Source: Selaginella moellendorffii (taxonomy: Eukaryota > Plantae > Lycopodiophyta). From it: DNA of 64,000 nt. The stretch covers positions 39,467-103,466 of the forward strand of contig NW_003314351.1 of assembly GCF_000143415.4 (NCBI RefSeq). The letters run 5' to 3'. The position numbers and the translations under genes were made by a program. Positions 1,357 through 45,173 of the stretch are shown here, one piece after another; the stretch's first letter is position 1, and every line of letters begins with the position of its first letter. The notes under the pieces are model-generated. The model did not search any database. It was not told where the DNA came from and saw nothing but the letters and a program-made list of their open reading frames with translations.

Positions 1357-1960
1357 ATGGAGCTGCGAGGAGCAAGACGCGGTCTGGAGCTGCGGGGAGC
1401 AAGACGCGGTCGGCTTGGAGCTGTGGGCGTGATTGCATTTGGGCTCGTGGTCTGGATCCTCTGGAGCAAGATATACTTCCCCACACCGCCAGTGCCAGCA
1501 TTCTTGGATCCGTTCCAGCATCAGGCACACAAGGTTCCTACAGATGCGATTCCTGCCGAGGAGATCACCAAATCACGAATCTTTTGGCTAGGATTTTTGT
1601 CAATGGTATCTTCTCTAGTGGCTTCGATGGCACTAGCAGCGTTTTGCCATGGAGTGGATCCAGCGCGCGGTGGTGTTCTGGGCGATGGCGCGGCTCAAAT
1701 TGGTGGCCAAGAGGCGACTAGGATCTTTGTGGATGTGGGAGACGCTGGCGTTGCAAATGTGCTGGAGGGAGACGCCAGTGGCATGCTGGAGGAAGACGCT
1801 GGTGTTGCAAATGGGCTGGAGGGAGCCGCCGGTGCCATGCAGGAGGGAGACGCTGGTACCAACATCGTTGTGGATATGCCGGAGCAAGACGCTGCTGCTG
1901 GTGCACATGAGGGAAACGCTGCTGCAGGTGAGCGAGACACTGGTGCACAGGACGAGTGCG
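1357..1960 (+). CDS. 5' part of a membrane protein (2 TM + acidic repeat linker), paralog of the SWEET-like gene at 22567-23620; runs into assembly gap
   Basis: Open frame MELRGARRG...; PAFLDPFQHQAHKV...EITKSRIFWLGFLSM aligns with PVDLDVFAHEARSS...KITSSRWFLLGLAAS at 23540-23440; two hydrophobic segments. Confidence 0.6.
1359..1412 (+). repeat. 27-bp in-frame tandem duplication (ELRGARRG-L)
   Basis: ggagctgcgaggagcaagacgcggtct / ggagctgcggggagcaagacgcggtcg. Confidence 0.85.
1741..1857 (+). repeat. 54-bp coding tandem repeat (DAGVANVLEGDASGMLEE / DAGVANGLEGAAGAMQEG)
   Basis: Two full units plus the start of a third (gacgctgg...); degenerate related units continue up to the gap. Confidence 0.8.
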
Positions 1961-5260: not shown

Positions 5261-6011
5261 CATGAGAGTACGGAGGATTATTACCATCTTCATATCTCTT
5301 CTCTCACATCTTACCTTCTCTCCCCACGTCCATCAGTTTAAGGAATTTAAGCACTGTCGGGATGATGGATGTCGAGTTTTGGCCTGGCACCTGGGTTAAA
5401 AATTCACTCGCTCTCGCGATCACCTTGATGATAGACTATGGAGTTACGAGGCATCAGAAGAACTTTATCAACACTCGAGATACACTAAAAAGCCTTGCCA
5501 TATACAACATTGCAGATCAACTTCAAGCAAGTGATGAGGTTGATCACTTGCAAGTTTTCCGTCAGTTTACTTTGGATATTCCCCTACTCTAAATCTCCAG
5601 CGCCATGGACGCTTGCATCGCGACTGGGAATCCCGCGGTATTCAGCAAATCCTCACGTCCCGCTCTAAGCTGAGCTGGCATTCTTGTGATTGAGCAATAT
5701 TTCTTCACAGAGGCTGTGAATTTCTGGATGGCGAATTCAGCTGTGTGGGACGACGATGCCGTGCCAGCTGCTCACGATATCGCCAGGTTTTGGTGTGCGG
5801 GATCCTCGTCTTTGATTTCACTCAGAAGATTTTCCTTGCTTCCAAGCCGGAGCATTGTTTCTACAAGACACTGTCCGGTGAGTGTTTCCACGTTCTCTTG
5901 ACATCGATTTTGCTTCAATCGTTGTGGAACTGTTTAACCCCGGTAAAGGGATTCTTGTGCTTAAATTCCTTTCTTTTTGCATAGGATCTATTAGGGCTTG
6001 AAAGGTTGGGT

Positions 6012-6862
6012 ATGGAAATTACTAGTAAGAGCGTTCCATTGTGGTGGTTCTTCTTACCTATTTCAATTATTATGACTTGGGCCATTACTTTCTATGATTT
6101 CACCGTTTACATCACTTTTTATCCTCCAAAGTGGCACTGCCCAAGTGGTGTTCTCTATTGTAGAAGAGACTGCAATGCACTAAACCTTGGCTACCATTGG
6201 GGTTTTACGTCAGATTACTTGGCTTATGTAACAATTGGGCCAAAGTACTCTGCCATTCGATATTGGCAGCTTGTTTGCTTCACTCACCACATATATACTT
6301 TTTTATCAGTGGGTTATATTATTGGAGGTAAGACAGTCTCATAAGTATTATTTCTAAGATGTTTTTTACAGCTATTATTGGAATCGTTACTCTGATGCAC
6401 TCCAGGTGCTGTATGCTGGTTAGTATTTTTATTGGAGCAGTGAGTGCATTAGCAAGCACATATGTCTCAAATCGCTCCTGGTTTATCGTTTGGCAAGTTT
6501 TGTCTGCAATAGCACATTCTTGTGCAGGAACATCAGCCATAATGAGATGGTTCATAGAAACACCCCGTTTTCTTGGCTGGAAAAGATGGCTTTTTCCAAA
6601 TCATGGATTTGCTGACCGCCAGGGGCAAGATCATTACCACATATGTGAGGTGATTGGTGGATATCCTATACTTTCTTTATGTGAGCCATGTTGCATACCT
6701 ATAATTTATGTCTGTAAACGTCTATATCCAGACTGGAGGTGGGGAAACAGGATGGTGTGCGTCATGGACTCTATTGTTGTTGTGGTGTTAATAGGGGAAA
6801 TGGTAGCACGGGTTCTGATGAAAAAAAGAGGCAGTGGGAGAGTAGCAAATGTTTCCGATTAA
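6012..6862 (+). CDS. Half-MFS OCT/SLC22-like 6-TM membrane protein (~268 aa; exons 6012-6327, 6372-6862)
   Basis: A 44-nt GT-AG intron (6328-6371) joins the two listed ORFs in frame; Cys-rich loop ending IGPKYSAIRYWQLVC resembles the OCT IGPK..VSEWxLxC motif; six hydrophobic segments. Confidence 0.7.
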
Positions 6863-7009
6863 GAAAGAAATATGGCTTCTTTTGTGTAATATTATGTGGT
6901 TGATGCAAAAGTTTGTAAAGGATTTGCAGTACTGTCAGAGTGCGAGGGGGGCATGGGGAAAATCCTTGCCACTTTTTCCAGTGAGCCTGATATTATTGTA
7001 GTTTAAAAC

Positions 7010-7310
7010 ACAAATAAGGTGGCCAAATCCCACTGCGTTGGCGAGCCCTGTCTGAGTCTTCCAGGAATCCATTCTGGGCATAGCACAGCAGTAGATTCGT
7101 CCATGACACGAGATCCTTGGCCGGCATTCTCCCTGGTGCGCGAGCTCCGTGATCATCGAGTTCCGTGTCACTCTGAGACGCGATCGAACATAGCCTGGCA
7201 GTCGCGGATCCGGGAGGCTGCCAAATATACGAGACAAGATCGCGGAACGCCATCCCATCAAACGTGTTCTTGGCGAGCGCAAGATGCCCGGACTGAGTAT
7301 ATCGATCGAA
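7010..7310 (-). pseudogene. PPR (PLS-type) gene fragment
   Basis: RMPAKDLVSWTNLLLCYAQNGFLEDS; paralogous to 15600-15870. Confidence 0.75.
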
Positions 7311-7789
7311 GAGCCGGGATGAACTAAGACCTCGGCGTATTATAATTAGATTTATAATTTATGCGTAGATTTATAAACTTGATTATTTCTAGTGACAATT
7401 CCAGTTAATTGTAATTTTATAGCTGCTTACATGTAGATAAGTGTATAGACAAGAGCTTCTAAAGTAATTCTAATAGCAAGCATCTTGCTCCGAGTTCCAA
7501 TCCCAAGAAAAAAGTTTGATTTAGCTTATAAGCCCAGAAAAGATGTTTTGCCCTGTTTGATTATATAAATTATTTATTGTTGCCCTTCAAACGTAACAGT
7601 AAAATAGCGGAACTTATTAATTATTTGATTTGTGGAAGTGCGTTTGAACGGCAGTGGATCGTAAAGTTGGAGGTGGACATTCCGATCCGGCCGCTAACAG
7701 CTCTTGTTAGCCTAACCAGACGCGCTCTTACTGGCTTAACTAACCAGACGCTCAAAACCATGAGAGTTTTACTTGTAAAGAGGGTTTTT

Positions 7790-9145
7790 GGTGGCATTGC
7801 GGGCGAGACAGGTATGTTTTTCTCGTTCTCTCTTCTTCCTGTGAGAATGCTGGTGAAATGCGTCCCGAGCCAAAGATTCCTAGCTTTCCTGAAGAGCCCA
7901 AGAGTCCCCATTTGCTGCTCCACGAATCGAAGAGGTGTGGTTTTGGTTTTTGGTGCTAAGTTCTCTCTTTTCACCCGTATCTGGTCTCTAGGAACCAGAT
8001 ACGCTGGAGAAGATTCATTTGAGCGCTTTGCTTCTGGTGTTACCCGGTTTACCAATTTTGTTTCTCAAGCTATACAACTCGACTTACGTTTTTCTTTGAC
8101 AGGCTTCTAGCGGAGGCAGTCAGGTGAAACGATTTGTTGAGGACGACTGGAAGTTGAGCGGCTTTTTCTTTACGGAGACGAGGCAGCTGAGAAGCATCGA
8201 GCTGTAAAAGACAGGGCCCCGTCAGAAGGCTCAATTGCAAACTTCCGAGTCTTCACCATGGGTTCTTCATTGGCATTTGTATGGAAAAGGTAGCATCGCT
8301 TATTACGTTTCAACGGGACTGACTTTATTGTTTTTTGAAAGCGCAGTCCGGGTTTACAAGAAACGATCAGACTTGTCTTTGTCTTGTCTCGAGAGTCTGG
8401 CGTCTAAAGGAATTGAATTTAGAAAAGAAGGTAAAACTCTTGCATGGAGTATATTCGTGTTTACAAATGTTATCGCTACAGGAAGGCGGGCCTATACACT
8501 CAGAAGCTAGGCTCGTGCGATAACACGGGCTATAAAAAAAAATATCGGAACTCACTATGTTCGACATTTGGATCTTGATGCTCCAACTCCAGGTTGCATC
8601 CCGAAGATCAGGTACTACGCTCTTACGGGTCCTCTTCTTACGTGTATCGTATTTATCGCAGAAACTGGAACATAATCTTTGAGAGATGTGCGGAATCTCA
8701 TCCGAGCTGGAAGAAACGCAGAGGCGCAGGACCTGTGTCCAACAGGGATTGCTCTTCGTTGCTCAGGTACATGAAACAAATGTTTCTAGACATCTTAAGC
8801 AAGCAGTGTTCTAAAACTTTCTTCGTTTGTCTTGTGATACTAGAGGAGAGAAGCCAACTTCAAAACAAGATAAAGCACTCGCACTGCTCAAATCCAAGCT
8901 CCTGGTGATTCCCGAGCAAAAACCAGTTGCTTATTTTCTTGAATTAATGACACAGCTATCTTTCATTATCAGGCGTGGAGAGCTGGCTGCATGACTGCTC
9001 ATTCAACGAGCGCGCTTTAGACGCTACAGAGCTTGATGGAGGAAGGAGGATATGGAAGTGGGCTTGCTTTTGTGCTTCCGAGGTATGGACTTGAACTTGT
9101 GTTTGTGTTTCCAAACAAGGTGTTCCAGAAAATAGCGTTGAGTGA
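7790..9145 (+). pseudogene. NUP107 pseudogene, 5' half with introns
   Basis: Collinear with intact gene ~63900-62370 (WHLYGKG, ESLASKELNLEKKV, HYVRHLD, WKWACFCASE, KIALSE); frameshifts and deletions. Confidence 0.9.
8739..8912 (+). pseudogene. Captured two-exon fragment of plastid peptide chain release factor 2 (PrfB-like) inside the NUP107 copy
   Basis: PTGIALRCS|intron|EERSQLQNKIK(fs)ALALLKSKLLVI, the RF2 'PTG..VRC.EERSQ..NK..AL..LK.KL' segment; absent from intact NUP107. Confidence 0.75.
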
Positions 9146-9204
9146 GTCCCGTTAAGGTACTTTGTGATAAACTTTTGACTAGCTCATGATTTCTTTTTCT
9201 ACAA

Positions 9205-9438
9205 AACTGATTGTATCCAAGAAAGGGGATGCCCGAGAAAAGCTGCTAGAAGCTGTCAACGAGTTCCCTCCAACAATGTTAATACTGGGAAGCCGAGGCC
9301 TTGGAATGGTGAAAAGGTTCGCTAGTTTACATTCCTCAAACCGTGGATTTGGACAGGACGTTCCTGGGAAGCGTGAGTGACTATGCTGCGCAGCACGCTG
9401 AATGCCCTGTGCTTATTGTCAAGCTTCCACACCCGTAA
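9205..9438 (+). pseudogene. Universal stress protein (USP) C-terminal fragment
   Basis: KGDAREKLLEAVNEFPPTMLILGSRGLGMVKR|intron|TFLGSVSDYAAQHAECPVLIVKLPHP*; no N-terminal half upstream. Confidence 0.85.
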
Positions 9439-9869
9439 GATTTTATGTGTTTCAAATGCCTTTTTTCTCTTTTTCTTTTGAGGGACATCAGTCCGCACTT
9501 TCTTAAGTTAACCCTCAGAAAGCAAATCGATTCGCTTGTACAGGACCAAAATTCTGTGTTTTTGGATCCTCAAAGCGACACTTGCGCAGTTTCTAGAGCT
9601 TTTTCAAATTGTTTGTTTGGCCAATCTCTTTAGTTTATTTATTTGAGGTATATTCCTCTTTGGAAATTGCGGGTTCGATTTTGGCATTCAATTGAGTGCA
9701 GGAAAGTGTGAATATACGAAAAACGAAGACAAACATTGTCTTTGAGAAACTCAAAGTGCTAATTTGATAAACTTACGTGAATTCTCTAGCCCAAAGTTCT
9801 CTTGATTGGATGATATGAAAATCTTAGCGCTTTCAATTGCTCATTGCATTGTGGAAACATTTGCTACTC

Positions 9870-10160
9870 TCTACAACCTGTGCTTAGCACTTCCACAACA
9901 ACAATAGAGTCTTGTGGAGAGAACAAACCATCTTGTTTCCCCACCTCCAGTCTGGATATACACCCAAATCATAGTCGCATAAAGAAAGCATAGGATCCAA
10001 CCAATCAGCTCACATATATCGTTGTGATATCCCCCCATGATTTGGAAAAGGCCAGGGCACGCCAAAACTTGCCAAATGATAAACCATGAGCGATTTGGGA
10101 CATATGTGTTTGCTAATGCACTAACCGCTCCAATAAAATACTAACCAGAATACAGCACCT
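9870..10160 (-). pseudogene. Half-MFS OCT-like pseudogene (exon 2 remnant)
   Basis: Reverse complement matches 6405-6800 (aggtgctgtattctggttagtatt, atgtcccaaatcgctcatggtttatc, atccagactggaggtggggaaac). Confidence 0.85.
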
Positions 10161-10169
10161 AATAATTCC

Positions 10170-10500
10170 CGGAAATGGAGGAGGATGGATGCATCCTCCA
10201 GTCACCAATTGCAGGTAAAAGAATTATTGCTAGAAACTCTTATAACTTTCTTGTGAATCCAGACACTGGATACAATTGCTTTGAGAATTACTTATGAGTA
10301 TTAATACTTTTCTTATTCTTGTTCGTCTTGCTAGCTCTCAGGTTAGGCATGCATACGAGCATGGTGTACATGGAGCTAGAAAAAAATTGAAGACTTGATA
10401 GGAGCATTTCATGCAAAGACCATGGGAAGAAATGCTTGACGCAGTTGGATAGTTGATAGCACAGATTCCACTCTATTTTGCAATTACTCACAGCCAAAAC
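10170..10500 (+). pseudogene. Decayed paralog of the unidentified gene at 2870-3320
   Basis: Shared gcaggtaa..a..tattgctagaaact, aatccagacactggat, gagcatgg.gtacatgga. Confidence 0.7.
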
Positions 10501-12126
10501 TTGGCATTGGGATTGAAGACATTTTGTCTAGCTAGTTTCTATCACTCCTAAACTAGAGATAACATTAGAGCTACTTTCTAAAAAGAAGATAATGAAGAAA
10601 AGTACATTTGCAAATGCAATAGTAATAACTTTTATGACATTGCATAGTCCATCTCCTAAATGTGTTTCAACTAAGAAAAATCCACATTTCCAGTTATATC
10701 AATCTAACACAAAATAATAATAATATATAGTAAATAAGAAACTAGATTATATAAGTTCATAATTCAATTTATGATGAAACAAGATATAAAACAAAAGTAG
10801 AGTTTTACAAATTATTAATAAAATTATAAGACAATAGCAAGTTTAAGCCAAGTTGAAGATGAATCAATTGTGCTTCAAGGATGACAATGAGAAAGTTCCA
10901 ACTTTATTTAAGTATCTGGCCTGGATTGATTGCAAAACATAAGTTAACTTTAGTTATAAGTTTATGAATTGTTGTTATTACTAATTTTTATAAGTACTTT
11001 TATAGTACTTTCTTGCAAAATTAAGGTTGAAATCATCTTTGGAAAAATTTATCATACCATTCAGATTTATGATTCAGATTCAGATTCAGAACTAAACTAT
11101 ATATAAAAGTGTTGTTTATATATATATAATTAAAAACTTGAAGGATAAACCAAGAACTATTTGAATTTTAAAACTTACATATATCAAACTCATATCTAGT
11201 ACTAAATGTATTCAATCAAGTTATTAAAAGAAAAAATGAAAAAAATTAATTAAAATACTTGTAAAGATGAATAATAGTTTTCTCTAAAGATGAATTCAAT
11301 TTTATTCTTGGATTTTTAGGAGAAAATCATTATGAATATATTAAATAGTGTTAAAATTATTGTGGATGTGCTGAAGGGAGATGATGGTGCCACTAAAAGA
11401 TGCAAATAAATGATACACTAATATATGTCAGCGATATCTACCGATGATCGCTGAGTTTTTTTGTGAAAAAAATATCCATCAAAACATAAAAAATTCACTA
11501 AAATTGTTATATGATTACATTCAACAACATTTAATTTACTTAATAATAGTGTTATTCATTTTTATTATTTAATTACTCAATGAGATAACATGGCTCAAAA
11601 AGATAGTGAAGAAGATAGTGCAACCATAAAAAAAAAGATTAATTAATAAAGAGAAATATTTTATGAGGGAAACATTTATTGTTGTTATACCACTCGCAAA
11701 AAATAGTGATATATTATTTATTGTTATTGATAGTGGCAATGTTTAAGGAAGTGATACTCTTCACATATATATTTAAATTTTACGATTTATAAGTGATAAT
11801 TTAATGAATCCTTTATCCCCCACTTTTAATACTCTTAGGGCTTTCCACTCTCAATGCGATTATTATAGTGAAGTGGAGTAGTGATTATAATAATTTTTAC
11901 CACTTAATTATTACTTTTTAAAGTTTCTTTTTTGTTTTTCGGCTCTTCAAAGTGATTGCCAAGTTTTTTGCTAAATGAGGATGAAGAATCATAATACTAT
12001 ATTCTTTGTTAAGACCACTTTTGATGTGAATGGTGAAAAAAAATCTAAAAGTCCTATTACCCAACTTTTGAAGTCTTAATTATAAATAATTTAAATAAAT
12101 AGAAAAAGAATTAATATTTCATAATA

Positions 12127-13572
12127 TATTAATATATGGAGTTTTTGTAGGGCTAGGGGATTTATGCTCATTATTGCAATATTTAATGGACACTTTTAAA
12201 TATGATTTATATGTAAATTGAATTAAAAAATGATATAAATGATGGCTTTCTTGTTTTTAAAATTATTTTTTCTATCATATTTAATTGAAATGTTAAAATT
12301 AAAAGAGGGAGTGGGTATGATTGCATTTACAATTTTCATTTGATTATTTGAGTAAATTATATTTTTATATACGATTGATATTAACAATTTTTTTGATCTA
12401 TTTCAACACTAAACACACATAGTTTTTAACAATGAAAACACTGAAACATGAACCTTCTGGGTATGATTTGTTTCAATGCTCTCCTCATTTGTTATTTTTA
12501 TAACGCTAACAATATTTTGTTATAGAGTAGATTTAGTATGTAATGGTATTTAGGGGTATCACAAAGCTCAAATTAATAGTCAATAGGCAACTAAAATCAA
12601 TCTGGATAATGTTAAAATCTTTATAAATATATTAAAAGGTGTTAAAATTATTGTAAATATGCTAGAGCAAAACACTACTAGTAATGCCACAAAGGGATGT
12701 AAGTGAGTGACATATTAATGTATACAATAAATATTTTTGTGAAGGAAATATTTATCCAAATGAAAACATTTCACCAAAATTATTATATAATTGTATGCAA
12801 CAATAAATGTTATTTATTTCAGTGTTTAATGAGATAAAATCGTTGAGTTGGCTCAACAAGGAGATAGTATAGCCTTAAAAAAAATGATAGATTAACTAAT
12901 TAAAAGAAATATTCATTTGATGATTTATGAGAAAAATTTTTGTTGTTGTTATGCCACTTGTATAATATAATAGTGTGTTATCTATTACAACTTATGGTAG
13001 CAATATTTAGGTAAATGGATGCTTTCACATGATATTCAAACTTTGGGATTTATAAATGATATTGCATTAAAAATAAAATTGCAAAATAAAAAATTTATTT
13101 TCCTTCTTGTAATATAGTGTTGACATTAGTTCTTGTATTAACAAATGTAATATTTAAATAACATGCACAAACATTTACCCATCATATATTAGCAATCATA
13201 TCAATTTGATTGAAGAAATTAAATAAGACAAAATAGTTAAGATATATAAAAAATAAAATAAAAACTCAATAGTTGAATTCCAAGAACTAATTGAACTGAA
13301 AATTTTAAGTATTTCAAGCTTAAATCCAATATTGCAAGGGATCATGTAGCTTTTAGAAAAAAAAAACTTAATTTTTTAAAAAAGAAAGAAACAGTAAAAC
13401 AAGAATATAAAATATATATTGGTTTAACAAAACACATTTTATAGTAGAAACAATTATTTTTAAAATAAAAAACCACCATTTATATCATTTTCAACTCAAT
13501 GTATATGCAAATTCAGATTTAATGCCCTAGGGTTTACAAACCCTAGCCCTACAAAAACTCTATATATTAATA
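12127..13572. mobile_element. AT-rich ~1.45-kb element bounded by 32-bp inverted repeats (putative non-autonomous DNA transposon)
   Basis: tattaatatatggagtttttgtagggctaggg (12127-12158) vs ccctagccctacaaaaactctatatattaata (13541-13572), 31/32 match; adjacent hairpin ctagggtttacaaaccctag. Confidence 0.5.
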
Positions 13573-13604
13573 CAAGATCTCTATAATTAAAGGTTGACAA
13601 ATAA

Positions 13605-13850
13605 ATTGTGGTAGCTTTTTACCTATTTATTGTGACTTAGTCTTTATGTTTTCACCATCTACATCACAAGAAAATTGCCCAAATGGTCTTTATTGTCAAA
13701 GAGATTGCACCTTGGCTGGGGTTTTATAATGGATTTCCTGGCTTATGCAAAAATTGGGCCAAAATTCTTTGCAATTCAATATTGTCAATTTGTTTTATTC
13801 ACTCAGGGATATATTATCGAAGGTAATATTACACTATCATAAAATATTAT
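13605..13850 (+). pseudogene. Half-MFS OCT-like pseudogene (exon 1 remnant)
   Basis: Matches 6040-6350 (tgcccaaatggt..tattgtcaaagagattgca, ggcttatgcaaaaattgggccaaaa). Confidence 0.85.
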
Positions 13851-13869
13851 TCCATTATTGAAATTTGTT

Positions 13870-14770
13870 GACCACGATCATCAAGTATAGCCCTCCACCA
13901 AAGCTTTTCCCCATGACACTAACATATGAGGAACCTTTGCATTGCATTCTGGAACAAAGTTGAGGTCATGGAAATTCGGAGTCACAGAACGATGGAAAGC
14001 AGCATCCACAGCTTACAATTGGACTATTACAAGGGATGTGCTTGGAGGTGAAGAAGACTTATTACCTCATAAAAGTAAGGATAGTGGCACTTTATGGCGC
14101 TGAGATATGGGGCCAGGCCTGCTAGCGAAGGAGTAGGACAAAGTCGAGGCTGTGCAACGAAGTTTCATTTGGGAAGAATTCAGCATCAACCTTGTGCCAT
14201 ATGTGATCATGGAGACAGGCCTCTTTTCCCTAGAAATACTCGCACGATCATCTACATCTGAAAGAGCAGAAGTTGGCAGTCACAGGACAGACAGGCGGCT
14301 GGTGGCATGACATGAAACAGGACCAAAAGAGTCGGTCTGAATCTCAACATCACAGAACGATTCCATGAAGATCTTGAATTCTGGACACACATCGTGCTAA
14401 TAAGATGGATCCAAGCCCAGAAGAACCACACAAAATACAAGCTCTACGTGGAGGAGATCAACCCAAACGAACAGGTGGGAACGGCTCTTTATGATCAGCT
14501 CTTTCCCTGGCGACAGAAACTCCTTGCACGTTACAGAACAGGTGATCATAGACTACTCGTGGAACTAGGATGAAGAACAAGACCAGCAAAGATTCCGCGA
14601 CATCTACAGCTTTGCCCAGTGTGTGGCATGTCCGTCGAGACAGTAACACATACGGTCAAGGAATGCTCAGGATACGACTCAGGCCGATCCCATGGGATAT
14701 GCCTGTAGCTAACATCCTTGGGACACCTGAAAACGCAGCGGAGATAACCAGGTTCCTGGAATAGATGGAG
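13870..14770 (+). mobile_element. Non-LTR retrotransposon (LINE) ORF2 3' remnant
   Basis: ALYGAEIWG..., METGLFSLE, and a C-terminal CCHC knuckle CPVCGMSVETVTHTVKEC; stops and frameshifts. Confidence 0.65.
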
Positions 14771-14949
14771 GTCCAGAGGCAAACACTTGTCAATGAAAGC
14801 ATACTTGTGTTGTTGGAGCTGGAAAATGAAAGGAAACAGCAGAACAGATGACACCAAACTTGCAGGGCCATACTCCAATCACCACAAACAAGCAACACAA
14901 CAGATGGGAGTGGGAACAATGATAAATGGGCAACAATCCGCGGCAGAAG

Positions 14950-16890
14950 AGGCAGCAAGCTCCCAGCAGCGACATCCAGATCACCATGTCTGGAAGGAAT
15001 GGCATCGAGTTGATGAGCTCCTTCGCACTCAGAGTTCTTCATGCAGCAATAGCGCTCTCTCCTCGGCACCATCTCAAAGTCTCGGCTGATTGAGACGAAG
15101 TGCTCCCAGCCCTTGGCAATGGCTGCACGAAGTTAAAACGCTCCGGAACGTCACCTTGTCCAGCGTGACGCCCTCGAGATTCATAAGATGGAAGACTTCC
15201 ACTGCTCGATCGTAGTGCCCGTCGTCCCAAGCTGAGCATCTTCATGCTCTTAATCACACTCCTGGCGGTGCCGAGATGGCCCAAATTGACGTAAACTTGC
15301 ATGAGAGCTGTCCAGCAGACGATGGTCTTGTGTGGGATCTCGTGGAAGAACCTCACGGCTCCGTCAAAGTGCCCATTCTCGGCATACGCGAGAAGCAGCT
15401 CCACGAGACTAGATTCTTCTCCGACACTTGATCAAAGATGTTCTTCGTCCTTGGTGGCAGTAAGCCTGCACCATTGCCGTCCACGCCACCACGTCCTGAT
15501 CCGGCATGGAATCAAAGATCTCTCTTGCGTTTGCAAAATCTCCTCTTTGGGTATTCTCGTAGTTCTTGCCACTGCGTTGGTGAAGGGGAGCCGATGGAAC
15601 GCCCTGTCCAATTTTTCCAGGAATCATTCTGCGCGTAGCACAGCAGTAGATTCGTCCACGACACGGCCGGCATTCTATCAAAGATCGATTTTGCTGCCTC
15701 GTTTTGCCCCTGCGCGAGCGCAGTGATCATTGAGTTCCATATCACGGCCTGGCGCTCTGGGACACGATCGATCATCGCCTGACAGTGGATGCTGCCACAT
15801 ATCCAGCGATCATCGAGTTCCACGAGACAAGATCATGAAACTCCATCCCGTCAAACGTGTCTTGGCAAGCTCAAGTTGCCCGAACTGGGCATACAGTGTA
15901 ATGGGCGATTTCCAAGAGACCATGTCATGATCCGCCATGGAATCGAAGATCTTCTTGTCCTAGCCGAGATTGGAGCTCCGAATATAGGATTTCACAACCA
16001 CGTTACACGAGATTCCAGTGGGGCAATCGATCAAAGAGGTTCCCTCCCTCACGTCGTGGTGGCACATTCGATCGAAGAACATAGCCTTGGCCGCCCAGCA
16101 GCCCTCACAAGATCCACCGGGAAATGCCGCTCTCTAGCCCTGTGATCGCCCGACATTGCTCTCTGGGAAGAACCCAAAGTTTTGGTTCTTGCGATCATAG
16201 GCGACCATTGATCGCGGGCGATTTGGATCTTCCCCAGATGGCTGCAAGCCGAAAGGATGGTGATGAACGACACAGGATCGATCCTCACTCCACCATCGAG
16301 CGTGGCCTCGTTGGCCGCGTGATCGAGGCTCGAGCTGTGCTCGCCGCAATGCCCACGAGAGTGGATATCTCCCGCATAGCCGGAGAGGATCGCGTTCCAG
16401 GTGAAAACGTTCCATTTCGACATTTGCTGCCGGATCTTGAGGGCGTCCTCCATTCTCCCGGCCTGGCCGAGCATTGCGACAAGCATATCAAGTCCCTTGT
16501 GGGCATTTGGTGGTGGATCGCCATCGACATGCCCGTCCTGGGCATAGGCGGCAGCGATTGATGTAGGCAACTGTGGCATTCGATCAAACAGCAGCTTCGC
16601 TCTGTCCGGGATGCCGTTTTCCATCAGCCCATTCCAAGGCACGAGATTCTACTGGGGGAAAACATCCTCTCGGCCTCTTCTACAAGGCATAGCCCGACAC
16701 TATTGTTGTCCACGAATCCAAGTCCCTCGTTACCATTGTCTCAAAGACACCTCGAGCCTCCACCAAATTCCCGATTTGCATGAAAGCTCTCACCAACGCA
16801 GTTGATAGTATTGAGGTCATTGGCTTTCTTTTTTCTTTGATTTTGGCTTCCTTGCCCAAGTCCCTCCGAGCTTGCTTGTTTCCTTACAGA
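14950..16890 (-). pseudogene. Degraded PLS-class PPR gene(s)
   Basis: Repeated AREIFDSMPDQDVVAWTAM, LLAYAENGHFDGA, FDRMP, FITILSACSHLG, MPFLPDMVIWMSLLGAC (E-domain start) across shifting frames. Confidence 0.85.
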
Positions 16891-17645
16891 CACGAAGCAT
16901 CGAGCTGTACAAGACAGGGTTCTATGCCAAAAGAGCTCAATTGCTACATTCCGAGGCTTCATCATGGGCACTTCTGTGGCATTTGTGTGGAAAAGGTAGC
17001 AGTGTTTCTTAGAGGATAGAATGGAAGACAATCAGGTAGTCTGAGTTTGTAAGAAATGATAGGACTGCTCAAACATGTCTTCGGGGTCCAAGGAATTGGA
17101 TTTAGAAAAGGTGGTCATTTGAGTATATGCGTGTCTACAAATGTTATCCTTACTGAGGAAGGCATGGGATGTGGATTCCTACACTCAGAAGCTAAACAAA
17201 ACATGCAATCAAGATCAAATATCAGAACTCACTATGTTCTACATTTGGATCCTGATGCTCCAACTCGAGAAGGCTTACAGTTGCATCCTGAAGATCAGGT
17301 ACTACGCTCTTACTGGTCCTCTTCTTACATGTATCATATTTATCACAGAAACTGGAAGATGGTCTTTTGGAAAGCTGGAAGAAAAACAGAAGCGCAGGAC
17401 CTGAGTCCAACAGGGATTAGGTACATGAAAACGTTTATAGACGTCTTCAGCAAGAAGTGCTCTAAAACTTTTTCGTGTTTCTTGTGATACTAGAGGAAAG
17501 AATCCAAGATACCGCACTACTCAAATCCAAGCTCCTGGTGGTTCTCTTGTATTGAATTAGTGACACAGCTATCTTTCATTCTCAGGCGTGGAAAGCTGGC
17601 TGCATGACTGCATGCTCACCTCATTTAACGAGCGCGCTTTAGACG
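16880..17645 (+). pseudogene. NUP107 pseudogene fragment carrying the PrfB insert
   Basis: Matches intact gene ~63370-62500 (HLDPDAPTREGLQLHPEDQ); PrfB-derived insert at ~17407-17545. Confidence 0.9.
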
Positions 17646-18178
17646 TTAGGACACATGGCGCAGATCAATTTGCTTGGGGAGTTTTCTCTTGGTAGTAAAC
17701 ATTCTGTGGAAGTTCCATATTTCCGCTACAAGGAACACACCATCTTTATGACTCAAACATACTTTAGTGCTATTTCCACTATGCTTGACAATTTTTCTCG
17801 AAGTACAAAGACAGCAAGCAAAGATGGTGCAGTGTATCAGGGCGATTGACAGTGCTCATGTTTCAGCAAGAAATCAAACGTGATGATAGCCTCTAAGGTT
17901 TGTTTGTGTTGCAAATGTATGAGTGCTTATAAGGCTGTTGCTCAACATTTGAACTATTGCAATAATTTTAGATATTATATAGAGAATTTATAATAATTTC
18001 CAGTGCATCAACGTTTGGTTTGTTATTTCTAATCCACTTGATCAATAAATAATAAACATGTTTGTAATTTATAAAAACAAGATAGAATAAAAAAGAATAT
18101 ACTGTTTAGAACATTTTATAAATTATAAACATGTTTATAAATTAATAAATGCAATATTAATTTAAATTAATAACAACA

Positions 18179-18770
18179 TTAGTATCCTAGAATATCCATG
18201 CATATTCTAGGTATATTCACTTGTAAATCTACCCTAACCTCAATATTAACTATAACTAATACCACCATAATACATATTGGGAGCAAGGATAAGAAGACTA
18301 TTTCTGAGAACATACCCCAAAATGATATGGAAGAAGTTATTGGATATGGTTGTTCTCTGAGTTTCTTTAGCTCTAAATACCACCTTATAACTGATGATGT
18401 CTGCACATGAATGTGCTACTGCAGAGATCACTTGTAAAGCAATGAACCATCACCGATATAAAACACATGTGCTTGTAAACGCAGTAGCTCTCCAATAAGA
18501 AAGCTAATCAACATGCATAACTTGTAACGGATTCCTATGGCAACTGGAACAAATTGTTATAAAGGTTCATAAATAAATCTAGCTTCTCCAGACATAGCCA
18601 AGTGATAGAATGGCATATAGATATGGAGTAAAGCACAGTATCTAATTGCAGATTGTTTGGCCCAATTTTTCTAGTTCTGATGTAAGGAGAATAAAAACCC
18701 CAATGGTAATTAGGATGTAGTGCATTACAGCTCTTCTGACAATGAGAAACACCACATAAACGCTAATTCC
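18179..18770 (-). pseudogene. Half-MFS OCT-like pseudogene
   Basis: Close to 19580-20355 (tgtaatgcactacatcctaatta, gtgatctctgc.gtagcacattc) but frameshifted, with the intron donor lost. Confidence 0.85.
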
Positions 18771-19289
18771 AATGAAATTAGTATGAAATTATTGGTGTTT
18801 GCCATAAACCTTAACCTTATAAGAAGATCTTTTTATAAGCTTTAGGGAGATGGAGGAATGTGAGTGCGGGATGGAGGGAGCGAGAAGACCCTGACAACAA
18901 ACTTACAAACTTGTTTGCACAGTCTCATGTTTCTTGTTGGGCACCCCATGACTACCAAAACAGAATATTCAATTCAATTCAAGTTAGTGCTAATCTTTTT
19001 TCTGTCTTTTTTCAGATATTTCTTCCTTGTTCTGTTATGAAGGTTGAAAGGACGATAATTGATGCTCTCAGAAGTAAGATCAATTACACAGGCCATTAGG
19101 ACGTTTTTGGTTATTTGCATGCAAGTCTTCCCTCAATTTTGTTCTTTCTTACTTGACGCAGCCTGTTCACGATTCCTGAAGCTCATATTCAAGTGCTAAG
19201 GGCAGGACTATCAAGTAAAGAAATTAGCCTCTCAAACTAATGAAGCTCTTGTGCTAATGAAGCTCAAACTCTGTTCATAGTTTAAAGAG

Positions 19290-19450
19290 AAACTTCAAAT
19301 TTTTGCTCACCTCCATAGCAGGTAAAGACTATTTTGGAAAAGCTTGTGAAGCAAAGTAGTTGAACTGTGATAGCTAGAAATGCTCCAATGAGATGTAAGA
19401 GCTGAAACTAGACAATCCAGCTAAAAATCAACCACACATCATTTCTCAGC
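19290..19450 (-). pseudogene. C-terminal remnant of SWEET-like membrane gene
   Basis: VWLIFSWIV*FQLLHLIGAFLAITVQ...CYGGEQ matches AWLVFSSIVEYQILHIVGACLAVAVQ...CYGGEQ at 22630-22760. Confidence 0.8.
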
Positions 19451-19579
19451 TTATCTTCCAAACTTCCCATACTGCAATGGATTGAGCTAGGTGCAAGATA
19501 GGATTGATTTTCCACAAACTTCAGTTAATATATCCACTAATTGTAGATTCTAAAATATTTACAAACAGAATTTACTATG

Positions 19580-20355
19580 TTACAATTCATTAGCTATTCT
19601 TCCATTGTTACTTCTAATATTAACTATAATTAATACCACCATTTCCACCACCAGCATCATGGTAAGAAATGAGTCCATAATAAATATCAGCCTATTTCCC
19701 CACCTCCAGTCAGAATACATATGAATACATATTGGGACCAAGGGTAGAAAGAGTAATTCAATGAATATAGCCACTAACGATATGGCATAAGTTCTTTGAT
19801 ATGGTTCTTCACTGCGCTTCTTTATCTCTATGCACCACCTTATAGCTGATGATGTCCCTGCGTAGGAATGTGCTACCGCAGAGATCACTTGTACAGCAAT
19901 AAACCATGACCGATGTGAAACATATGTGCTTGTAAGCGCACTAGCTCCTCCAATAACAAAGCTAACCAACATACATAACTTGTATTGGAAGCGTGTAGCA
20001 AATCCCATGGCAACTGAAATAAATTGTTAAGTGTATTCTTAAATAAATCTAGCTTACCTCCAGCCACATAGCCCAGTGATAGCAAAGTATATAGATGTGG
20101 AATGAAGCAAGGAAGTTGCCAATATCGAATTGCAGAATAATTTAGCCCAATCCTCGCAGCTCCGATGTAGCAGGAATAGAAATCCCAATGATAATTAGGA
20201 TGTAGTGCATTACAGCTCTTTTTGCAATGAGAAACACCGTGTGGGCAATCCCATTTTGGAGGGTAAAGAGTGATAACTATGGTGTATACATAAAAGCTAA
20301 TTGCCCAAGTCGAGAAAATTGAAATAAGAACGAAATACCACCAGAAGTTTGCCAT
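19580..20355 (-). CDS. Half-MFS OCT/SLC22-like 6-TM membrane protein (~243 aa; exons 20355-20058, 20013-19580)
   Basis: 44-nt GT-AG intron (20057-20014) at the same position as in the 6012 paralog restores one open frame; conserved PPKW.CP.GV..C...CNAL, YSAIRYWQL.C, DWRWGNR. Confidence 0.7.
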
Positions 20356-22566: not shown

Positions 22567-23620
22567 TCAACACAGTGCGCACAGGCCTGTGAATTCAAAG
22601 ATCGCGATATAGAAACAAGAGAACTTTCAGATTTGCTCACCTCCATAGCACTTTGAAACGAAGCTTACAAAGTAGATGGCCTGAACTGCAACAGCCAAAC
22701 AAGCTCCCACGATATGGAGAATTTGGTACTCAACGATGGAGCTAAAAACCAACCACGCAACTCCAGAGAGCAACGAGCAAGCAGAAGCTATCACCGTGGA
22801 GGCCTCATGAGTGAACGGGAGGAGACATATCACCCTCATCACGAAAGGAACTACAGCTGAGACCGTGTAAACAGCTGCTGTGGCCCAGCCCTTCTTTCCC
22901 TTCAAACGACGACATGCGATGCCCATGAGAGGGTAGAAGAACGGGATGAGAGCTGTGAGCAGTATCGTCATACACCCTTTCCTCCGCTGCTTCTCGATGT
23001 GTCCAAGCCCGACCAGGAATGAATGCAGGAAACAAAAGGCCGATGCGGCACAGATCGCGGTGGCAATGAGAGTTAGATCGTGCCCGTCTTGCGTCCACTT
23101 TTGACACATCGAGATGGCATTTGCCAGAGACAAGAAGGAAGTAAGCAGTGCAAGTGCCCTCTGAGATTGTGAAGGGCTGGCAGGGATTACCTCCGCTTGG
23201 GACTGTGCTGTTGCGGCCTGATCCATCTCCACTGCCACCAATCCTCCAGCTATGGCCCCCGTCTCTAGCTCCTCATTCGTGGCCGCCGTTGTGCCAGGCT
23301 TGCGCCTCCTCAGAATGTTCCTTGCCTGAGCTGTTGCCCTCGCAATGCAGCTCTCCACAGCTAGTTGTCTGGCACGCAGCCGTGCTCTCAACCCAGCTGG
23401 ACAAAACGATCACAGAAGACGAGAGAAACGTAAATCCTGATGCAGCAAGACCAAGAAGGAACCACCGCGAAGATGTGATCTTGTCATCGCTGACGCTAGA
23501 TCTGGCCTCATGGGCAAACACATCCAGATCCACAGGCGAGAGAGAATCCAGGAGAGAATCTAGGTAGAAACTAGCCATGGCCACAAGCGAGAGGAGGAGC
23601 GTCTTTGCTAAAACCCCCAT
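22567..23620 (-). pseudogene. Divergent SWEET/MtN3-like multi-pass membrane gene with N-terminal 2-TM extension; one apparent frameshift near 23390-23275
   Basis: Two overlapping ORFs in different frames; GWATAAVYTVSAVVPFVMRVI..PF, SLLSGVAWLVFSSI and HIVGACLAVAVQAIYF follow the spacing of SWEET TM5-7; possible last intron 22641-22585. Confidence 0.5.
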
Positions 23621-23699
23621 CCTGCGATACCTAGGAAATGCTGTGTAACCTAGGAACTGCGTGTATGTTTCTGTGAAGAAACACACTCGATCAGCGCGA

Positions 23700-27950: not shown

Positions 27951-27974
27951 CAATCAACAAATTTCAATAATGGA

Positions 27975-28232
27975 ATAATATTTTATGATAGTGTAATATT
28001 ACCTTCAATAATATATCCCACTGAATATATATGGTGAGTGAACAAAACAAATTGAAAATATTGAATTGCAAAGAATTTTGGCCCAATTTTTGCATAATCC
28101 AGGAAATCCTTTATAAAACCCCAGCCAGGGTGCAATTTCTTTGACAATAAAGACCATTTGGGCAATTTTCTTGTGATGTAGATGGTGAAAACATAAAGAC
28201 TAAGTCACAATAAATAGGTAAAATGCTACCAC
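27975..28232 (-). pseudogene. Half-MFS OCT-like exon 1 remnant (duplicate)
   Basis: WGFIKDFLDYAKIGPKFFAIQYFQFVLFTHHIYSVGYII. Confidence 0.85.
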
Positions 28233-30742
28233 AATTTAATAGTCTTATTTGTCAACCCTTAATTATAGAGATCTTGTATTAATATATAAGGGCTAGGGTT
28301 TGTAAACCCTAGGGCATTCACTATTACAATGCTAAATACACACTCTTAAATCTGAATTTGCATATACATTGAGTTGAAAATGATATAAATGGTGGTTTTT
28401 TGTTTTTAAAATAATTTTTTCTACAATAAGATGTGTTTTGTTAAACCAATATATATTTTATATTCTTGTTTTACTGTTTCTTTCTTTTTTTAAAAATTAG
28501 GTTTTTTTATTCTAAAAGCTGCATGATCCCTTGCAATATTCCATATAAGCTTGAAATACTTAAATTTTTAAGTTCAGTTAGTTCTTGGAATTCAACTATT
28601 GAGTTTTTATTTATATCTTATTATTCAACTATTGAGTTTTTATATATCTTAACTATTTTGTCTTATCTAATTTCTTCAATCAAATTGATATGAGTGCTAA
28701 TATATGATGGGTAAATGCTTTTGTACGTTATTTAAATATTATATTTGTTAATACAAGAACTAATGTCAACACTATATTACAAAAAGGAAGATAAATTTTT
28801 TATTTTGCAATTTTATTTTATTGCAATATCATTTGTAAATCCCAAAGTTTGAACATCATGTGAAAGCATCATTTACCTAAATATTGCTACCATAAGTTGT
28901 AATAAAAAACACACTATGATATTCTACAAGTGGCATAATAACAACAATTTTTTTTTTCATAAGTCATCAAATGATTATTTTTCCTTTAATTAATTAATCT
29001 ATATTTTTTTTAAGGCTACACTATCTCCTTTTTGAGCCAACTCAATGATATTATCTCATTAAACACTGAAATAAATAACATTTACTGTTGCATACAATTA
29101 TATAATAATTTTGGTGAAATGTTTTTGTTTGGATAGACATTTCCTTCACAAAACAAATTATTGTATACATTAATATATCACTCACTTGCATCACTTTGTG
29201 GCATTACTATTAGTGTTTCCCTCTAGCATATTTACAATAATTTTAACACTTTTTAATATATTCATAAAGATTTTAACATTATCCAGATTGATTTTGGTTG
29301 CATATTGACTATTGATTTGAGCTTTGTGATACCCCTAAATACCATTGCATATTAAATTTACTCTATAGCAAAATATTTTTAACGCCATAAAAATAACAAA
29401 TGAGGAGAGCATTGAAACAAATCATAGCCAGAAGATTCATGTTTCAGTGTTTTCATTGTTAAAAACTATATGTGTTTAATGTTGAAATAGATAAAAAAAA
29501 TTGTTAATATCAATAGTATATAAAAATATAATTTATTCAAATAGTCAAATGAAAATTGTAAATGCAATCATACCCACTCCCTCTTTTAATTTTAACATTT
29601 TAATTAAATATGATAGAAAAAATAATTTTAAAAACAAGAAACCATCATTTATATTATTTTTAATTCAATTTACATATAAATCATATTTAAAAGTGTGCAT
29701 TAAATATTTCAATAATGACTGCAAATCCCCTAGCCCTACAAAAACTCCATATATTAGTATATTATGAAATATGAGTTCATTCACGCTTCTTTTTCCAATT
29801 ATTTAAATTACTTATAATTAAGACTTTAAAAGTTGGGTAATAGGACTTTTAGAGTTTTTTTTCACCATTCACATCAAAAGTGGTCTTAATAAAGAATATA
29901 GTATTATGATTATTCATCCCCATTTAGCAGAAAAACTTAGTAATCACTTTGAAGAGCCCAAAAATAAAAAAGAAACTTTAAAAAATAGAAATTAATTAAT
30001 AAAAATTATTATAATCGTTACTCCACTTCACTATGATAATCACATTGAGAGTGGAAAGCCCCAAGAGTATCAAAAGAGGGGGATAGAGGACTCAATAAAT
30101 TATCACCTATAAATTATAAAATTTAAACATATATGTGAAAAACATCACTTATTTAAATATTAGCACAACAATAAATAATATACCAATATCTTTTGCAAGT
30201 GGTATAATAACAATAAATGTCTCCCTCATAAAACATCTCCTTTTATTAATTAATCTTTTTTTTTATGGTTGCACTATTTTCTCCACTATCTCTTTAAGCT
30301 ATGTTATCTCATTGAATAAATAAATAATAAAAATGAATAACACTATTATTAAGTAAATTAAATGTTGTTGAATGTAATCATATAACAATTTTAGTGAATT
30401 TTTTATGTTTTGATGGATATTTTCTTCACAAAAAAACTCATTACATACATTAGTGTATCATTCATTTGCATCCTTTAATGGTACCATCATCTTCTTTCGG
30501 CATATCCACAATAATTTTAACACTATTTAATATATTTATAATAATTTTCTTCTAAAAATCCAAGAATGAAATTGAATTCATGTTTAGAAAAAACTATTAT
30601 TCATCTTTATAAGTATTTTAATTAATTTATTTTTCATTTTTTCTTTTAATAACTACGTGATTAAATACATTTAGTACTAGATATAAGTTTGATATATGTA
30701 AGTTTTTAAATTCAAATAGTTTTTGGCTTATCCTTAAAGTTT

Positions 30743-32550: not shown

Positions 32551-33115
32551 TTCCCAATACTTTGGCTTTGGTGTTGGAAACAATATGCCACATTATAAAA
32601 TAGTTTATGACATTAATATAATATACATATAATCTCACTTCTTATATAGATAAGTTAAATATAATCTCTAAAATTAGCTAATAATATCTTACCTGTTTTA
32701 CTTTTATTGGATTTTTCATTTTCTTGTAAATTCAATGCCTTTTGTGAAAATATTTTAGATACTAAATTATACTTATACAATACTAATTTGTGATTAAATA
32801 GATAGATAGATAGCTGTTTATATTATAAATATCAGGGAATACAAATGAATAAATTCAGTCATGATTACGTGCACAATTCTTATGCAGGGACACCATCAGT
32901 TATGAGGTGAGAAATGCAGTAATGGTCTTTTTACCCTATTTCCATAGCACTTCAAATTTTAAAGGTCATAAACGAGTATATACGTATTCTCAATTTGAAG
33001 TTATTTATTATAGTCTTTGGTAAGTACTGCATTGGTTTACCTTCTTTCGTTCTTGGGGTCTCTGCTGGGGTGAAGAAGGCAAACCGAGAAACAAAATCCC
33101 CTCCATTCGATTGCC

Positions 33116-44701: not shown

Positions 44702-45173
44702 GACCGCCACTCTCTCGCCCTTTCAAAAACTATTATAAGCGTTTAGAGAGCCCGTGAAAGTGGAGTAGATCGATCTGATGCGGCGTCTCAAGTGGTCTGA
44801 CACACCTAGAAATGACTTTGTTTCACGTGAGGCTTGCGTAACTCTTAGTTTTTTGGGTGTCAAAATGGCAGGATAAAGTTTTCCCAGGCTATTATATCAT
44901 CTACTTCGAAATACTTCACAATTTTCAAACCTGTCGATACAAGCCATTACCTCAATACTATAGCCTAGCTTGACAGCAATCTTCTTTTTCTAGTGGGTTT
45001 CAATCACAGTGAACCTTGTCAAGTCTAAAACAGAGCGTACACTGGAGTAAAATCGGTGTTGTTGTGAAACCACACACGAGTTTCCTGCAGATTGCGATGA
45101 GTGTGATGAGTGTGAGATTTGCAACGAAGTCTTTATAGAACAATCGTGCTCATCTGGGACTCTATAACCTTTC

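What the first reader, a model, noticed from the sequence alone, without database searches (positions are those of the whole stretch)
6012..20355. Expanded family of 'half-MFS' proteins: only the N-terminal 6-TM half of an OCT/SLC22 transporter
Seen: two intact genes (6012-6862 +, 19580-20355 -), each split by a 44-nt intron at the same position, giving ~268 and ~243 aa. Remnants lie at 9870, 13605, 18179 and 27975, plus a 40-bp scrap at 32871-32908. Established: plant OCTs have TM1, a Cys-containing loop ending IGPK..VSEWxLxC, then FFIGSLFG, A.S.S.N.W, ...LATE and a WR motif, with 12 TMs in total. These proteins follow that pattern (IGPKYSAIRYWQLVC, GYIIGAIIG, ASTYVSNRSW, RWFIE, DWRW) but both stop right after TM6 with a similar basic tail (GRVANVSD*/GRIANEL*), and the MFS motif-A loop appears lost. 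Two strongly diverged paralogs keeping open frames, Cys spacing and the same end point suggests selection. Inference: a half-transporter acting as a dimer, a dominant regulator of full OCTs, or a repurposed receptor-like protein.
Basis: partly seen in the sequence, partly recalled or inferred. Interest (0 to 1): 0.75.

Follow-up and report, generated by a model that had tools for sequence, protein, structure and literature searches.

The report
Half-size transporter-like genes in spikemoss
This spikemoss carries a small, species-restricted family of genes for six-helix membrane proteins that look like only the first half of an organic-cation-type transporter. Selection has kept them, but no RNA evidence for these two copies was found and their role is unknown.

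Summary
Two intact genes (6012-6862 +, 268 aa; 20355-19580 -, 243 aa) each carry one 44-nt GT..AG phase-1 intron at the same codon. Decayed copies lie at 9893-10160, 13636-13806, 18242-18755, 27974-28255 and 32871-32909.

Every profile, feature and fold search points only to MFS transporters of the SLC22/OCT, sugar-porter and SV2 branch, but each hit is weak. All are far below family cut-offs and both AlphaFold models are poor. The proteins end 10-18 residues after helix 6, motif A is degenerate, and no C-terminal half lies downstream.

Relatives appear only in Selaginella moellendorffii, giving four intact paralogues with the same intron site. dN/dS is 0.22-0.35. Expression of gene 1 is not shown: there were zero reads in two deep RNA-seq samples.

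New here: nearly every copy follows, on the same strand, a copy of an orphan multi-helix gene ("U"), only 64 nt upstream at one other locus.

The scan found this family before on other DNA of this genome (s1-430280, s1-385082, s1-421104). The function (dimer, regulator or partner of U) is untested.

The parts
6012..6327 (+). Gene 1 (H-g1) exon 1: start codon, helix 1, Cys loop, first part of helix 2
6328..6371 (+). Gene 1 intron, 44 nt, GT..AG, phase 1
   Evidence: same site in gene 2, L001/L002 (53 nt) and L003 (56 nt)
6372..6862 (+). Gene 1 exon 2: rest of helix 2 to helix 6, basic tail, stop
20058..20355 (-). Gene 2 (H-g2) exon 1
20014..20057 (-). Gene 2 intron, 44 nt, GT..AG, phase 1
19580..20013 (-). 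Gene 2 exon 2 with stop; carries the best single Pfam MFS_1 hit (E 5.6e-4)
18242..18755 (-). Pseudogene: tandem copy of gene 2, 77% nt identity, 5' end missing, frameshifts and stops
9893..10160 (-). Decayed exon 2 remnant (one 99-nt stretch 92% identical to gene 1; internal deletion; stops)
13636..13806 (+). Decayed exon 1 remnant
27974..28255 (-). Decayed exon 1 remnant, near-duplicate of the one at 13636
32871..32909 (+). 39-nt scrap, 85% identical to gene 2 nt 483-520
1357..1950 (+). Upstream orphan multi-helix gene U, N-terminal part (cut by assembly gap 1961-2821), same strand as gene 1
22630..23686 (-). U copy upstream of gene 2 on the same strand (two ORFs in different frames)
19303..19449 (-). 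Remnant of the 3' end of U, upstream of the 18-kb pseudogene
12284..12700 (+). U fragment upstream of the remnant at 13636
29206..29517 (-). U fragment upstream of the remnant at 28255

Best explanation
Genes 1 and 2 are intact members of a family found only in Selaginella moellendorffii. The family consists of stand-alone genes for a six-helix membrane protein that descends from the N-terminal domain of an MFS transporter of the SLC22/OCT-sugar porter-SV2 branch. It keeps helix 1, a Cys-containing outer loop and helices 2-6. It has lost motif A and everything from the central loop onward. The family evolves by local duplication and decay: in this window two copies are intact and five are remnants. 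The surviving copies have been under moderate purifying selection. As inference, the protein most likely works as an oligomer. Two halves (homo- or hetero-dimers of paralogues) would pack like the two domains of an MFS carrier, possibly held by the Cys loop as in SLC22 oligomers. Alternatively it pairs with another membrane protein. With motif A degenerate it is unlikely to be a classical rocker-switch carrier. Shown: gene structure, paralogy, truncation, selection and restricted distribution. Shown only weakly: MFS descent. Inferred: oligomeric mode of action. Not shown: expression of these two copies.
For: Structure and paralogy are shown. Four intact paralogues share one phase-1 intron site, and 57 alignment columns are identical in all four. 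MFS signal comes from several searches. Pfam MFS_1 is the only recurrent family, found in 3 members with best E 5.6e-4 on profile positions 56-180. The NCBIfam top hit is TIGR00898 (OCT family, E 7e-4), followed by sugar porter and SV2. The family profile hits a single PDB sequence out of 177,635, OCT2 8et9, at E 0.0018 over helices 2-4. In the ESM feature search 28 of 30 hits are Sugar_tr/MFS_1 clusters, top score 0.93. In the Foldseek search 49 of the 50 PDB matches listed are MFS transporters by their descriptions (the other is an unnamed entry), led by SV2A, OCT3 and OCT1. VIA-align gives Z 12.7-14.1 over 170-190 residues, and all Atlas matches are MFS. Truncation: the stop falls 10-18 residues after helix 6 in all paralogues. 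At the P0001 locus the next gene starts about 190-215 nt downstream, and near gene 2 the next family copy is 830 nt downstream. No helix-rich ORFs lie downstream. Selection: dN/dS is 0.22-0.35 in all pairs, 0.30 between haplotype alleles, Fisher p 5e-10, with no rate asymmetry between genes 1 and 2. Restriction: only S. moellendorffii proteins were found among 1.84 billion representatives and 5.8 billion clusters. SLC22 loop cysteines mediate oligomerisation (PMC11119549). A natural six-helix MFS half, FLVCR1b, exists (PMC3986552).
Against: Every MFS hit is far below the family cut-offs (19 vs 33 bits; 18.5 vs 551 bits). Exon 1 and helices 5-6 alone give no MFS hit. The exon 2 profile did not reach any full-length OCT at E <= 0.001 in 1.84 billion proteins. 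Both AlphaFold models are low confidence (pLDDT 54 and 48), so the fold matches are leads, and Z near 13-14 is within the range seen for unrelated helical bundles. No RNA-seq read covers gene 1 in two samples of 1.38 Gb each, while a neighbouring gene has 10-90x depth. The low-depth contigs in X1 and X2 never cross the intron and may belong to an antisense transcript or to DNA. Differences between those contigs and the window are 9 non-synonymous to 3 synonymous, compatible with recent relaxation. Five of the seven copies and fragments in the window are dead.
Confidence: 0.55

Rival explanations
1. The half-protein is not a transporter. It is a regulator or trafficking partner that binds full-length OCT/MFS carriers, or the neighbouring orphan membrane protein U, through the retained domain interface or the Cys loop, in a dominant-negative or accessory-subunit role.
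For: Motif A, which is needed for the conformational cycle, is degenerate. SLC22 carriers oligomerise through the first outer loop. The U-H gene pairing is kept at two anciently separated loci. Acidic residues conserved in helix 6, which is peripheral in MFS folds, could contact a partner (inference).
Against: No interaction data exist. U has no recognisable family. The P0001 locus has H without U. Adjacency may only reflect joint segmental duplication.
Confidence: 0.2
2. These are nearly neutral leftovers: partial duplicates of a transporter gene that are decaying and have no present function in this cluster.
For: Five of the seven copies and fragments in the window are dead. Gene 1 has zero RNA-seq reads in two deep samples. 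Allelic differences are 9 non-synonymous to 3 synonymous. The genes are not annotated in the protein collection.
Against: Four paralogues with dS of about 0.9 to 2.7 all keep open frames, the intron site, the stop position and 57 identical columns. dN/dS is 0.22-0.35. Alleles of the P0001 gene give 0.30.
Confidence: 0.12
3. This is an orphan six-helix family unrelated to MFS. The weak hits reflect shared hydrophobic composition.
For: All E-values are only 1e-3 to 1e-4. The models are poor. Helical bundles often reach Z near 13 by chance (note). Shuffled proteins reach ESM scores of 0.9 in 4-10% of cases (note).
Against: Five different methods and libraries name the same superfamily and the same branch, and no competing family recurs. 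The OCT2 alignment is collinear with helices 2-4 and places the remains of motif A in the correct loop.
Confidence: 0.08
4. H is not a stand-alone gene. It is the 3' part of a larger U-H fusion gene, as in the JGI models P0002 and P0004 (416 and 430 aa).
For: Two deposited models fuse U to H. U and H are only 64 nt apart in L003.
Against: The two fused models use different splice choices and skip the conserved, open exon 1 (helix 1 and Cys loop). One of them also splices out helix 5, although that stretch is in frame. H has its own ATG with an in-frame stop three codons upstream. U ends in stops in all copies. RefSeq models P0001 and P0003 are stand-alone, 253 aa.
Confidence: 0.05

Closest known systems
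SLC22 / organic cation transporter family (TC 2.A.1.19, TIGR00898), including plant OCTs
   Same: Best profile hits in NCBIfam and the PDB. There is a Cys-containing outer loop between helices 1 and 2. Helices 2-4 align collinearly with OCT2.
   Different: Only six helices are present. There is no central cytoplasmic loop and no C-domain. Motif A is degenerate. The loop is about 45-55 residues with 3 invariant cysteines. Scores are far below the family cut-off.
FLVCR1b, a six-helix product of the MFS gene FLVCR1 (PMC3986552)
   Same: It is a natural half-size MFS protein believed to act on its own.
   Different: FLVCR1b is the C-terminal half, made from an internal start site of the full-length gene. 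Here the N-terminal half is encoded by independent, duplicated genes.
SV2 and sugar-porter MFS branch (Pfam Sugar_tr)
   Same: These rank second and third in NCBIfam, are the top Foldseek matches (SV2A), and make up the ESM feature clusters.
   Different: Same differences as for SLC22. Branch assignment within this group is not resolved.
Split lactose permease halves (N6 + C6 co-expression; from my own knowledge, not checked here)
   Same: Shows that MFS domains can fold as separate six-helix chains and associate.
   Different: That is an engineered pair of two different halves. Here only an N-type half is known.

Membership tests
Major facilitator superfamily (Pfam MFS_1 / Sugar_tr) | Profile match at or above the curated gathering score | tested here: not met
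   Best score is 19.4 bits against a cut-off of 33.4. Three of 8 rows hit at E of about 6e-4 to 9e-4. Sugar_tr gave no hit.
Major facilitator superfamily (Pfam MFS_1 / Sugar_tr) | Twelve helices in two six-helix domains on one chain | tested here: not met
   Six helices, with the stop 10-18 residues after helix 6. No helix-rich ORFs lie downstream and the next gene is close.
Major facilitator superfamily (Pfam MFS_1 / Sugar_tr) | Motif A (G-x-x-x-D-R/K-x-G-R-R/K) in the loop between helices 2 and 3 | tested here: not met
   In the alignment to OCT2, the D-R-F-G-R-K motif faces a degenerate stretch. Only R-F..K survives in gene 2 and nothing in gene 1.
Major facilitator superfamily (Pfam MFS_1 / Sugar_tr) | Six-helix MFS domain fold | tested here: inconclusive
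   The model has pLDDT 48. Even so, 49 of the 50 Foldseek PDB matches listed, all listed VIA-align rows (Z up to 14.1, 190 residues, 3.4 A) and all 10 Atlas rows are MFS.
SLC22 / OCT (TIGR00898) | Family profile score at or above the cut-off | tested here: not met
   18.5 bits against 550.75, although it is the top-ranked model.
SLC22 / OCT (TIGR00898) | Large Cys-containing outer loop between helices 1 and 2 | tested here: inconclusive
   A loop of about 45-55 residues has 3 invariant cysteines plus one more in each paralogue. It is shorter than in animal SLC22. Its profile finds no SLC22 in the PDB.
   No plant OCT sequence could be fetched by reference. The resemblance rests on memory only.
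Natural half-size MFS proteins (FLVCR1b type) | Six-helix product that functions without the other half on the same chain | not tested
   The architecture fits (six helices), but function and oligomeric state are unknown.

The most novel reading that the evidence does not exclude
A plant has reverted an MFS carrier to the presumed ancestral state. A stand-alone six-helix N-domain would assemble as a homo- or hetero-dimer, or with the co-inherited orphan membrane protein U as a two-gene module that may be co-transcribed, to form a working transport or sensing unit that lacks motif A.
Probability: 0.15. Interest if true: 0.7.

Novelty: new variant of a known kind. Interest (0 to 1): 0.45.

Why it matters
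MFS carriers are thought to have arisen by duplication and fusion of a six-helix unit. Natural stand-alone halves are very rare, the known example being FLVCR1b, a C-half isoform. A selected family of independent N-half genes would give a natural system to test three questions. Can one MFS domain fold, traffic and dimerise alone? Which helix surfaces matter for that? Can such halves regulate full-length carriers? The conserved pairing with an orphan membrane gene offers a concrete partner to test. The limits are that the family is confined to one species, the homology is remote, and expression of these copies is unproven.

Tried and rejected
- The word search with gene 1 exon 2 found nothing.
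- PDB profile searches with exon 1 alone, exon 2 alone, the N-part and the helix 5-6 part gave only chance hits: LIF receptor, an antibody, SPT16 and CorA.
- Folding exon 2 alone (2 rows) and P0001 with 8 rows both gave poor models.
- I tested whether a DNA transposon carries the genes. No flanking inverted repeats were found, and similarity between genes 1 and 2 is limited to the coding parts.
- I tested whether U is the missing C-half. hhalign probability between the H and U profiles is 0.2%, and U has no Pfam, PDB or ESM family.
- The relative-rate test found no asymmetry between genes 1 and 2.
- No paper on Selaginella OCT-like halves was found.
All searches, folds and counts were done exon by exon by reference, with the stored RefSeq protein P0001 as the full-length proxy. 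A fold or dimer model of the joined gene 1 or gene 2 proteins was therefore left out.
Full report
**Observation**

- Gene 1 (+ strand) has exon 1 at 6012-6327, a 44-nt GT..AG intron at 6328-6371 and exon 2 at 6372-6862, giving 268 aa.
- Gene 2 (- strand) has exon 1 at 20355-20058, a 44-nt GT..AG intron at 20057-20014 and exon 2 at 20013-19580, giving 243 aa.
- Both introns are phase 1 and split the codon after the same conserved Gly.
- Unspliced, gene 1 stops inside the intron and gene 2 shifts frame.
- Introns of 40-77 nt are seen spliced in reads of the neighbouring gene, so 44 nt is ordinary for this genome.
- The two proteins are 58% identical in exon 1 and 44% in exon 2.

tblastn and blastn confirm every remnant.
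- 9893-10160 (-) holds exon 2 pieces.
- 13636-13806 (+) holds an exon 1 piece.
- 18242-18755 (-) is a tandem copy of gene 2, 77% identical, with its 5' end missing and frameshifts and stops.
- 27974-28255 (-) holds an exon 1 piece.
- 32871-32909 is a 39-nt scrap.

Every search, fold and count used exon references, or the stored RefSeq protein P0001 as a full-length proxy. A fold of the joined gene 1 or gene 2 proteins was left out.

**Relatives**

A profile of exon 2, searched with HMMER against 1.84 billion representative proteins, found two proteins and no full-length transporter. A word search with the family profile against 5.8 billion clusters found three. All are from Selaginella moellendorffii.
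- P0001 and P0003 are 253-aa RefSeq 'uncharacterized' proteins and are the two haplotypes of one locus.
- P0002 and P0004 are JGI models of 416 and 430 aa.

I fetched their loci.
- The P0001 gene has a 53-nt phase-1 intron at the same site. A PPR gene starts about 190-215 nt after it.
- The L003 locus holds a complete 262-aa copy with its own ATG, an in-frame stop three codons upstream and a 56-nt intron at the same site. The JGI models skip its first exon. P0002 also splices out helix 5, which is in frame.

The family therefore has at least four intact, diverged paralogues. They share 57 identical columns, concentrated before helix 2, in helices 3 and 4, in a Y-x-D-W-x-x-G-N turn and in helix 6.

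**Is it half an MFS/OCT carrier?**

Each line of evidence is weak, but all converge.
- Pfam gives MFS_1 as the only recurrent family: 3 rows, best E 5.6e-4, 19.4 bits against a cut-off of 33.4, profile positions 56-180.
- NCBIfam ranks TIGR00898 (organic cation transporter family) first at E 7e-4, followed by sugar porter and SV2.
- The family profile hits exactly one of 177,635 PDB sequences, OCT2 (8et9), at E 0.0018. The alignment is collinear over helices 2-4. It shows the motif A residues D-R-F-G-R-K facing a degenerate stretch.
- In the ESM feature search, 28 of 30 hits are Sugar_tr/MFS_1 clusters, top score 0.93.
- Both AlphaFold models are poor (pLDDT 54 and 48). Even so, 49 of the 50 Foldseek PDB matches listed are MFS transporters by their descriptions, led by SV2A, OCT3 and OCT1 at E from 2e-3.
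- VIA-align gives Z 12.7-14.1 over 170-190 residues, on either domain of MFS proteins.
- All Atlas matches are MFS.

Several results count against it.
- Exon 1 and helices 5-6 alone find nothing MFS-like.
- All scores are far below the family cut-offs.
- Z near 13 can arise between unrelated helical bundles.

I put MFS N-domain descent at about 85-90%. The branch (SLC22/OCT, sugar porter or SV2) is likely. A specifically OCT origin is favoured by the Cys loop but is unproven.

**Truncation**

All four paralogues stop 10-18 residues after helix 6 with a basic tail. No helix-rich ORF lies within about 4 kb downstream of gene 1 or 2.6 kb downstream of gene 2. The next family copy starts 830 nt after gene 2. 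The next gene starts about 190-215 nt after the P0001 gene. A hidden C-terminal half is therefore very unlikely.

**Selection**

Nei-Gojobori dN/dS values:

| Comparison | dN/dS | Note |
|---|---|---|
| Gene 1 vs gene 2 | 0.35 | dS 1.06; Fisher p 5e-10 |
| All other paralogue pairs | 0.22-0.31 | |
| The two haplotype alleles of the P0001 gene | 0.30 | |

A relative-rate test shows no asymmetry between genes 1 and 2. Synonymous sites are near saturation in the deep pairs, so these values are rough.

**Expression**

Only one reads call was allowed, and I laid 5300-9800.
- In two raw RNA-seq samples (1.38 Gb read from each), gene 1 has zero reads. The + strand gene at 7716-9527 has 10-90x depth with nine spliced introns.
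- Contigs of X1 (6416-6950, depth 10) and X2 (pieces of exon 1 and exon 2, depth 3-5) cover parts of gene 1. None crosses the intron.
- X1 is RNA, because it holds a spliced contig of the neighbouring gene. However, its contig on gene 1 may be the tail of a - strand transcript seen at 6961-7413.
- Differences in these contigs from the window are 9 non-synonymous to 3 synonymous. This fits relaxed constraint but is too few to decide.

Expression of gene 1 is therefore not shown, and gene 2 was not tested. An earlier scan note says the 253-aa member is transcribed. I did not test that.

**A two-gene module (new here)**

The N-terminal ~260 residues of the fused models are a separate orphan multi-helix gene, which I call U. 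Copies or fragments of U lie upstream, on the same strand, of nearly every H copy:

| U copy | Strand | H copy downstream |
|---|---|---|
| 1357-1950 (then assembly gap 1961-2821) | + | Gene 1 |
| 12284-12700 | + | Remnant at 13636 |
| 19449-19303 | - | 18-kb pseudogene |
| 23686-22630 | - | Gene 2 |
| 29517-29206 | - | Remnant at 28255 |
| L003: unspliced reading frame ends 64 nt before H's ATG | + | L003 copy |

Other points about U:
- The exceptions, with no U nearby, are the remnant at 10 kb and the P0001 locus.
- U has no Pfam, PDB or ESM family and is found only in this species.
- U is unrelated to H (hhalign probability 0.2%).
- U copies at the two loci are only about 26% identical, so the pairing is old.
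- The pairing may reflect only joint duplication of neighbours. The very short spacing in L003 makes co-transcription or functional coupling worth testing.

**Mechanism**

The shown facts are a selected, truncated, six-helix protein with an outer Cys loop and no motif A. Two pieces of established knowledge bear on it. The two MFS domains are structural repeats with the same topology. SLC22 carriers oligomerise through cysteines of the first outer loop (PMC11119549). From these I infer that the halves most likely act as dimers that mimic a 12-helix carrier, or as partners of another membrane protein (a full OCT or U). A natural precedent for a six-helix MFS product is FLVCR1b (PMC3986552). That protein is a C-half isoform rather than an independent N-half gene. 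The rivals (regulator, decaying relic, non-MFS orphan, U-H fusion) are scored separately in this report.

**Verdict**

This is a new variant of a known kind, a half-size MFS protein encoded by its own gene family. It is of moderate interest. The scan had already met the same family on other DNA of this genome (s1-430280, s1-385082, and the overlapping note s1-421104).

Noticed in passing
window 1357-1950, 12284-12700, 19303-19449, 22630-23686, 29206-29517; L003 10001-10852: An orphan multi-helix gene (U) sits upstream on the same strand of nearly every half-transporter copy, only 64 nt away in L003. It has no known family and is found only in this species. The deposited models P0002 and P0004 fuse it to the half-transporter, probably wrongly.
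   Followed up: partly
window 7716-9527 (+): A well-expressed multi-exon gene (10-90x depth, nine introns of 40-77 nt) lies just downstream of gene 1. Many reads are only 95-99% identical or run on into unlike sequence, so a close paralogue or allele elsewhere contributes. A decayed duplicate lies at about 16935-17611. The last exons look like a universal-stress-protein domain, but this is from reading the ORF only.
   Followed up: no
window 6935-7413 (-), 14.6-16.7 kb, 26.1-27.3 kb, 31.8-32.6 kb: PPR-repeat gene fragments are interspersed with the cluster (Pfam PPR on 16052-16642). A PPR gene also follows the P0001 gene at its own locus. A - strand transcript is seen at 6961-7413.
   Followed up: no
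window 1961-2821: An assembly gap (a run of N) interrupts the U copy upstream of gene 1. It also explains the long ORFs in all frames and the low GC reported there.
   Followed up: yes
window 13560-14300 and 27600-28330: The two exon 1 remnants lie in near-identical inverted duplicated segments that continue into the same flanking sequence. This indicates a recent inverted segmental duplication of an already dead copy.
   Followed up: partly
window 43565-44710, 45570-46820, 47273-48310, 37138-37836 (all -): Ordinary genes lie in the right half of the window, by Pfam on ORFs: AMP-binding enzyme, BTB/POZ-ankyrin-like, PATROL1-like TPR and an EB1 C-terminal motif.
   Followed up: no
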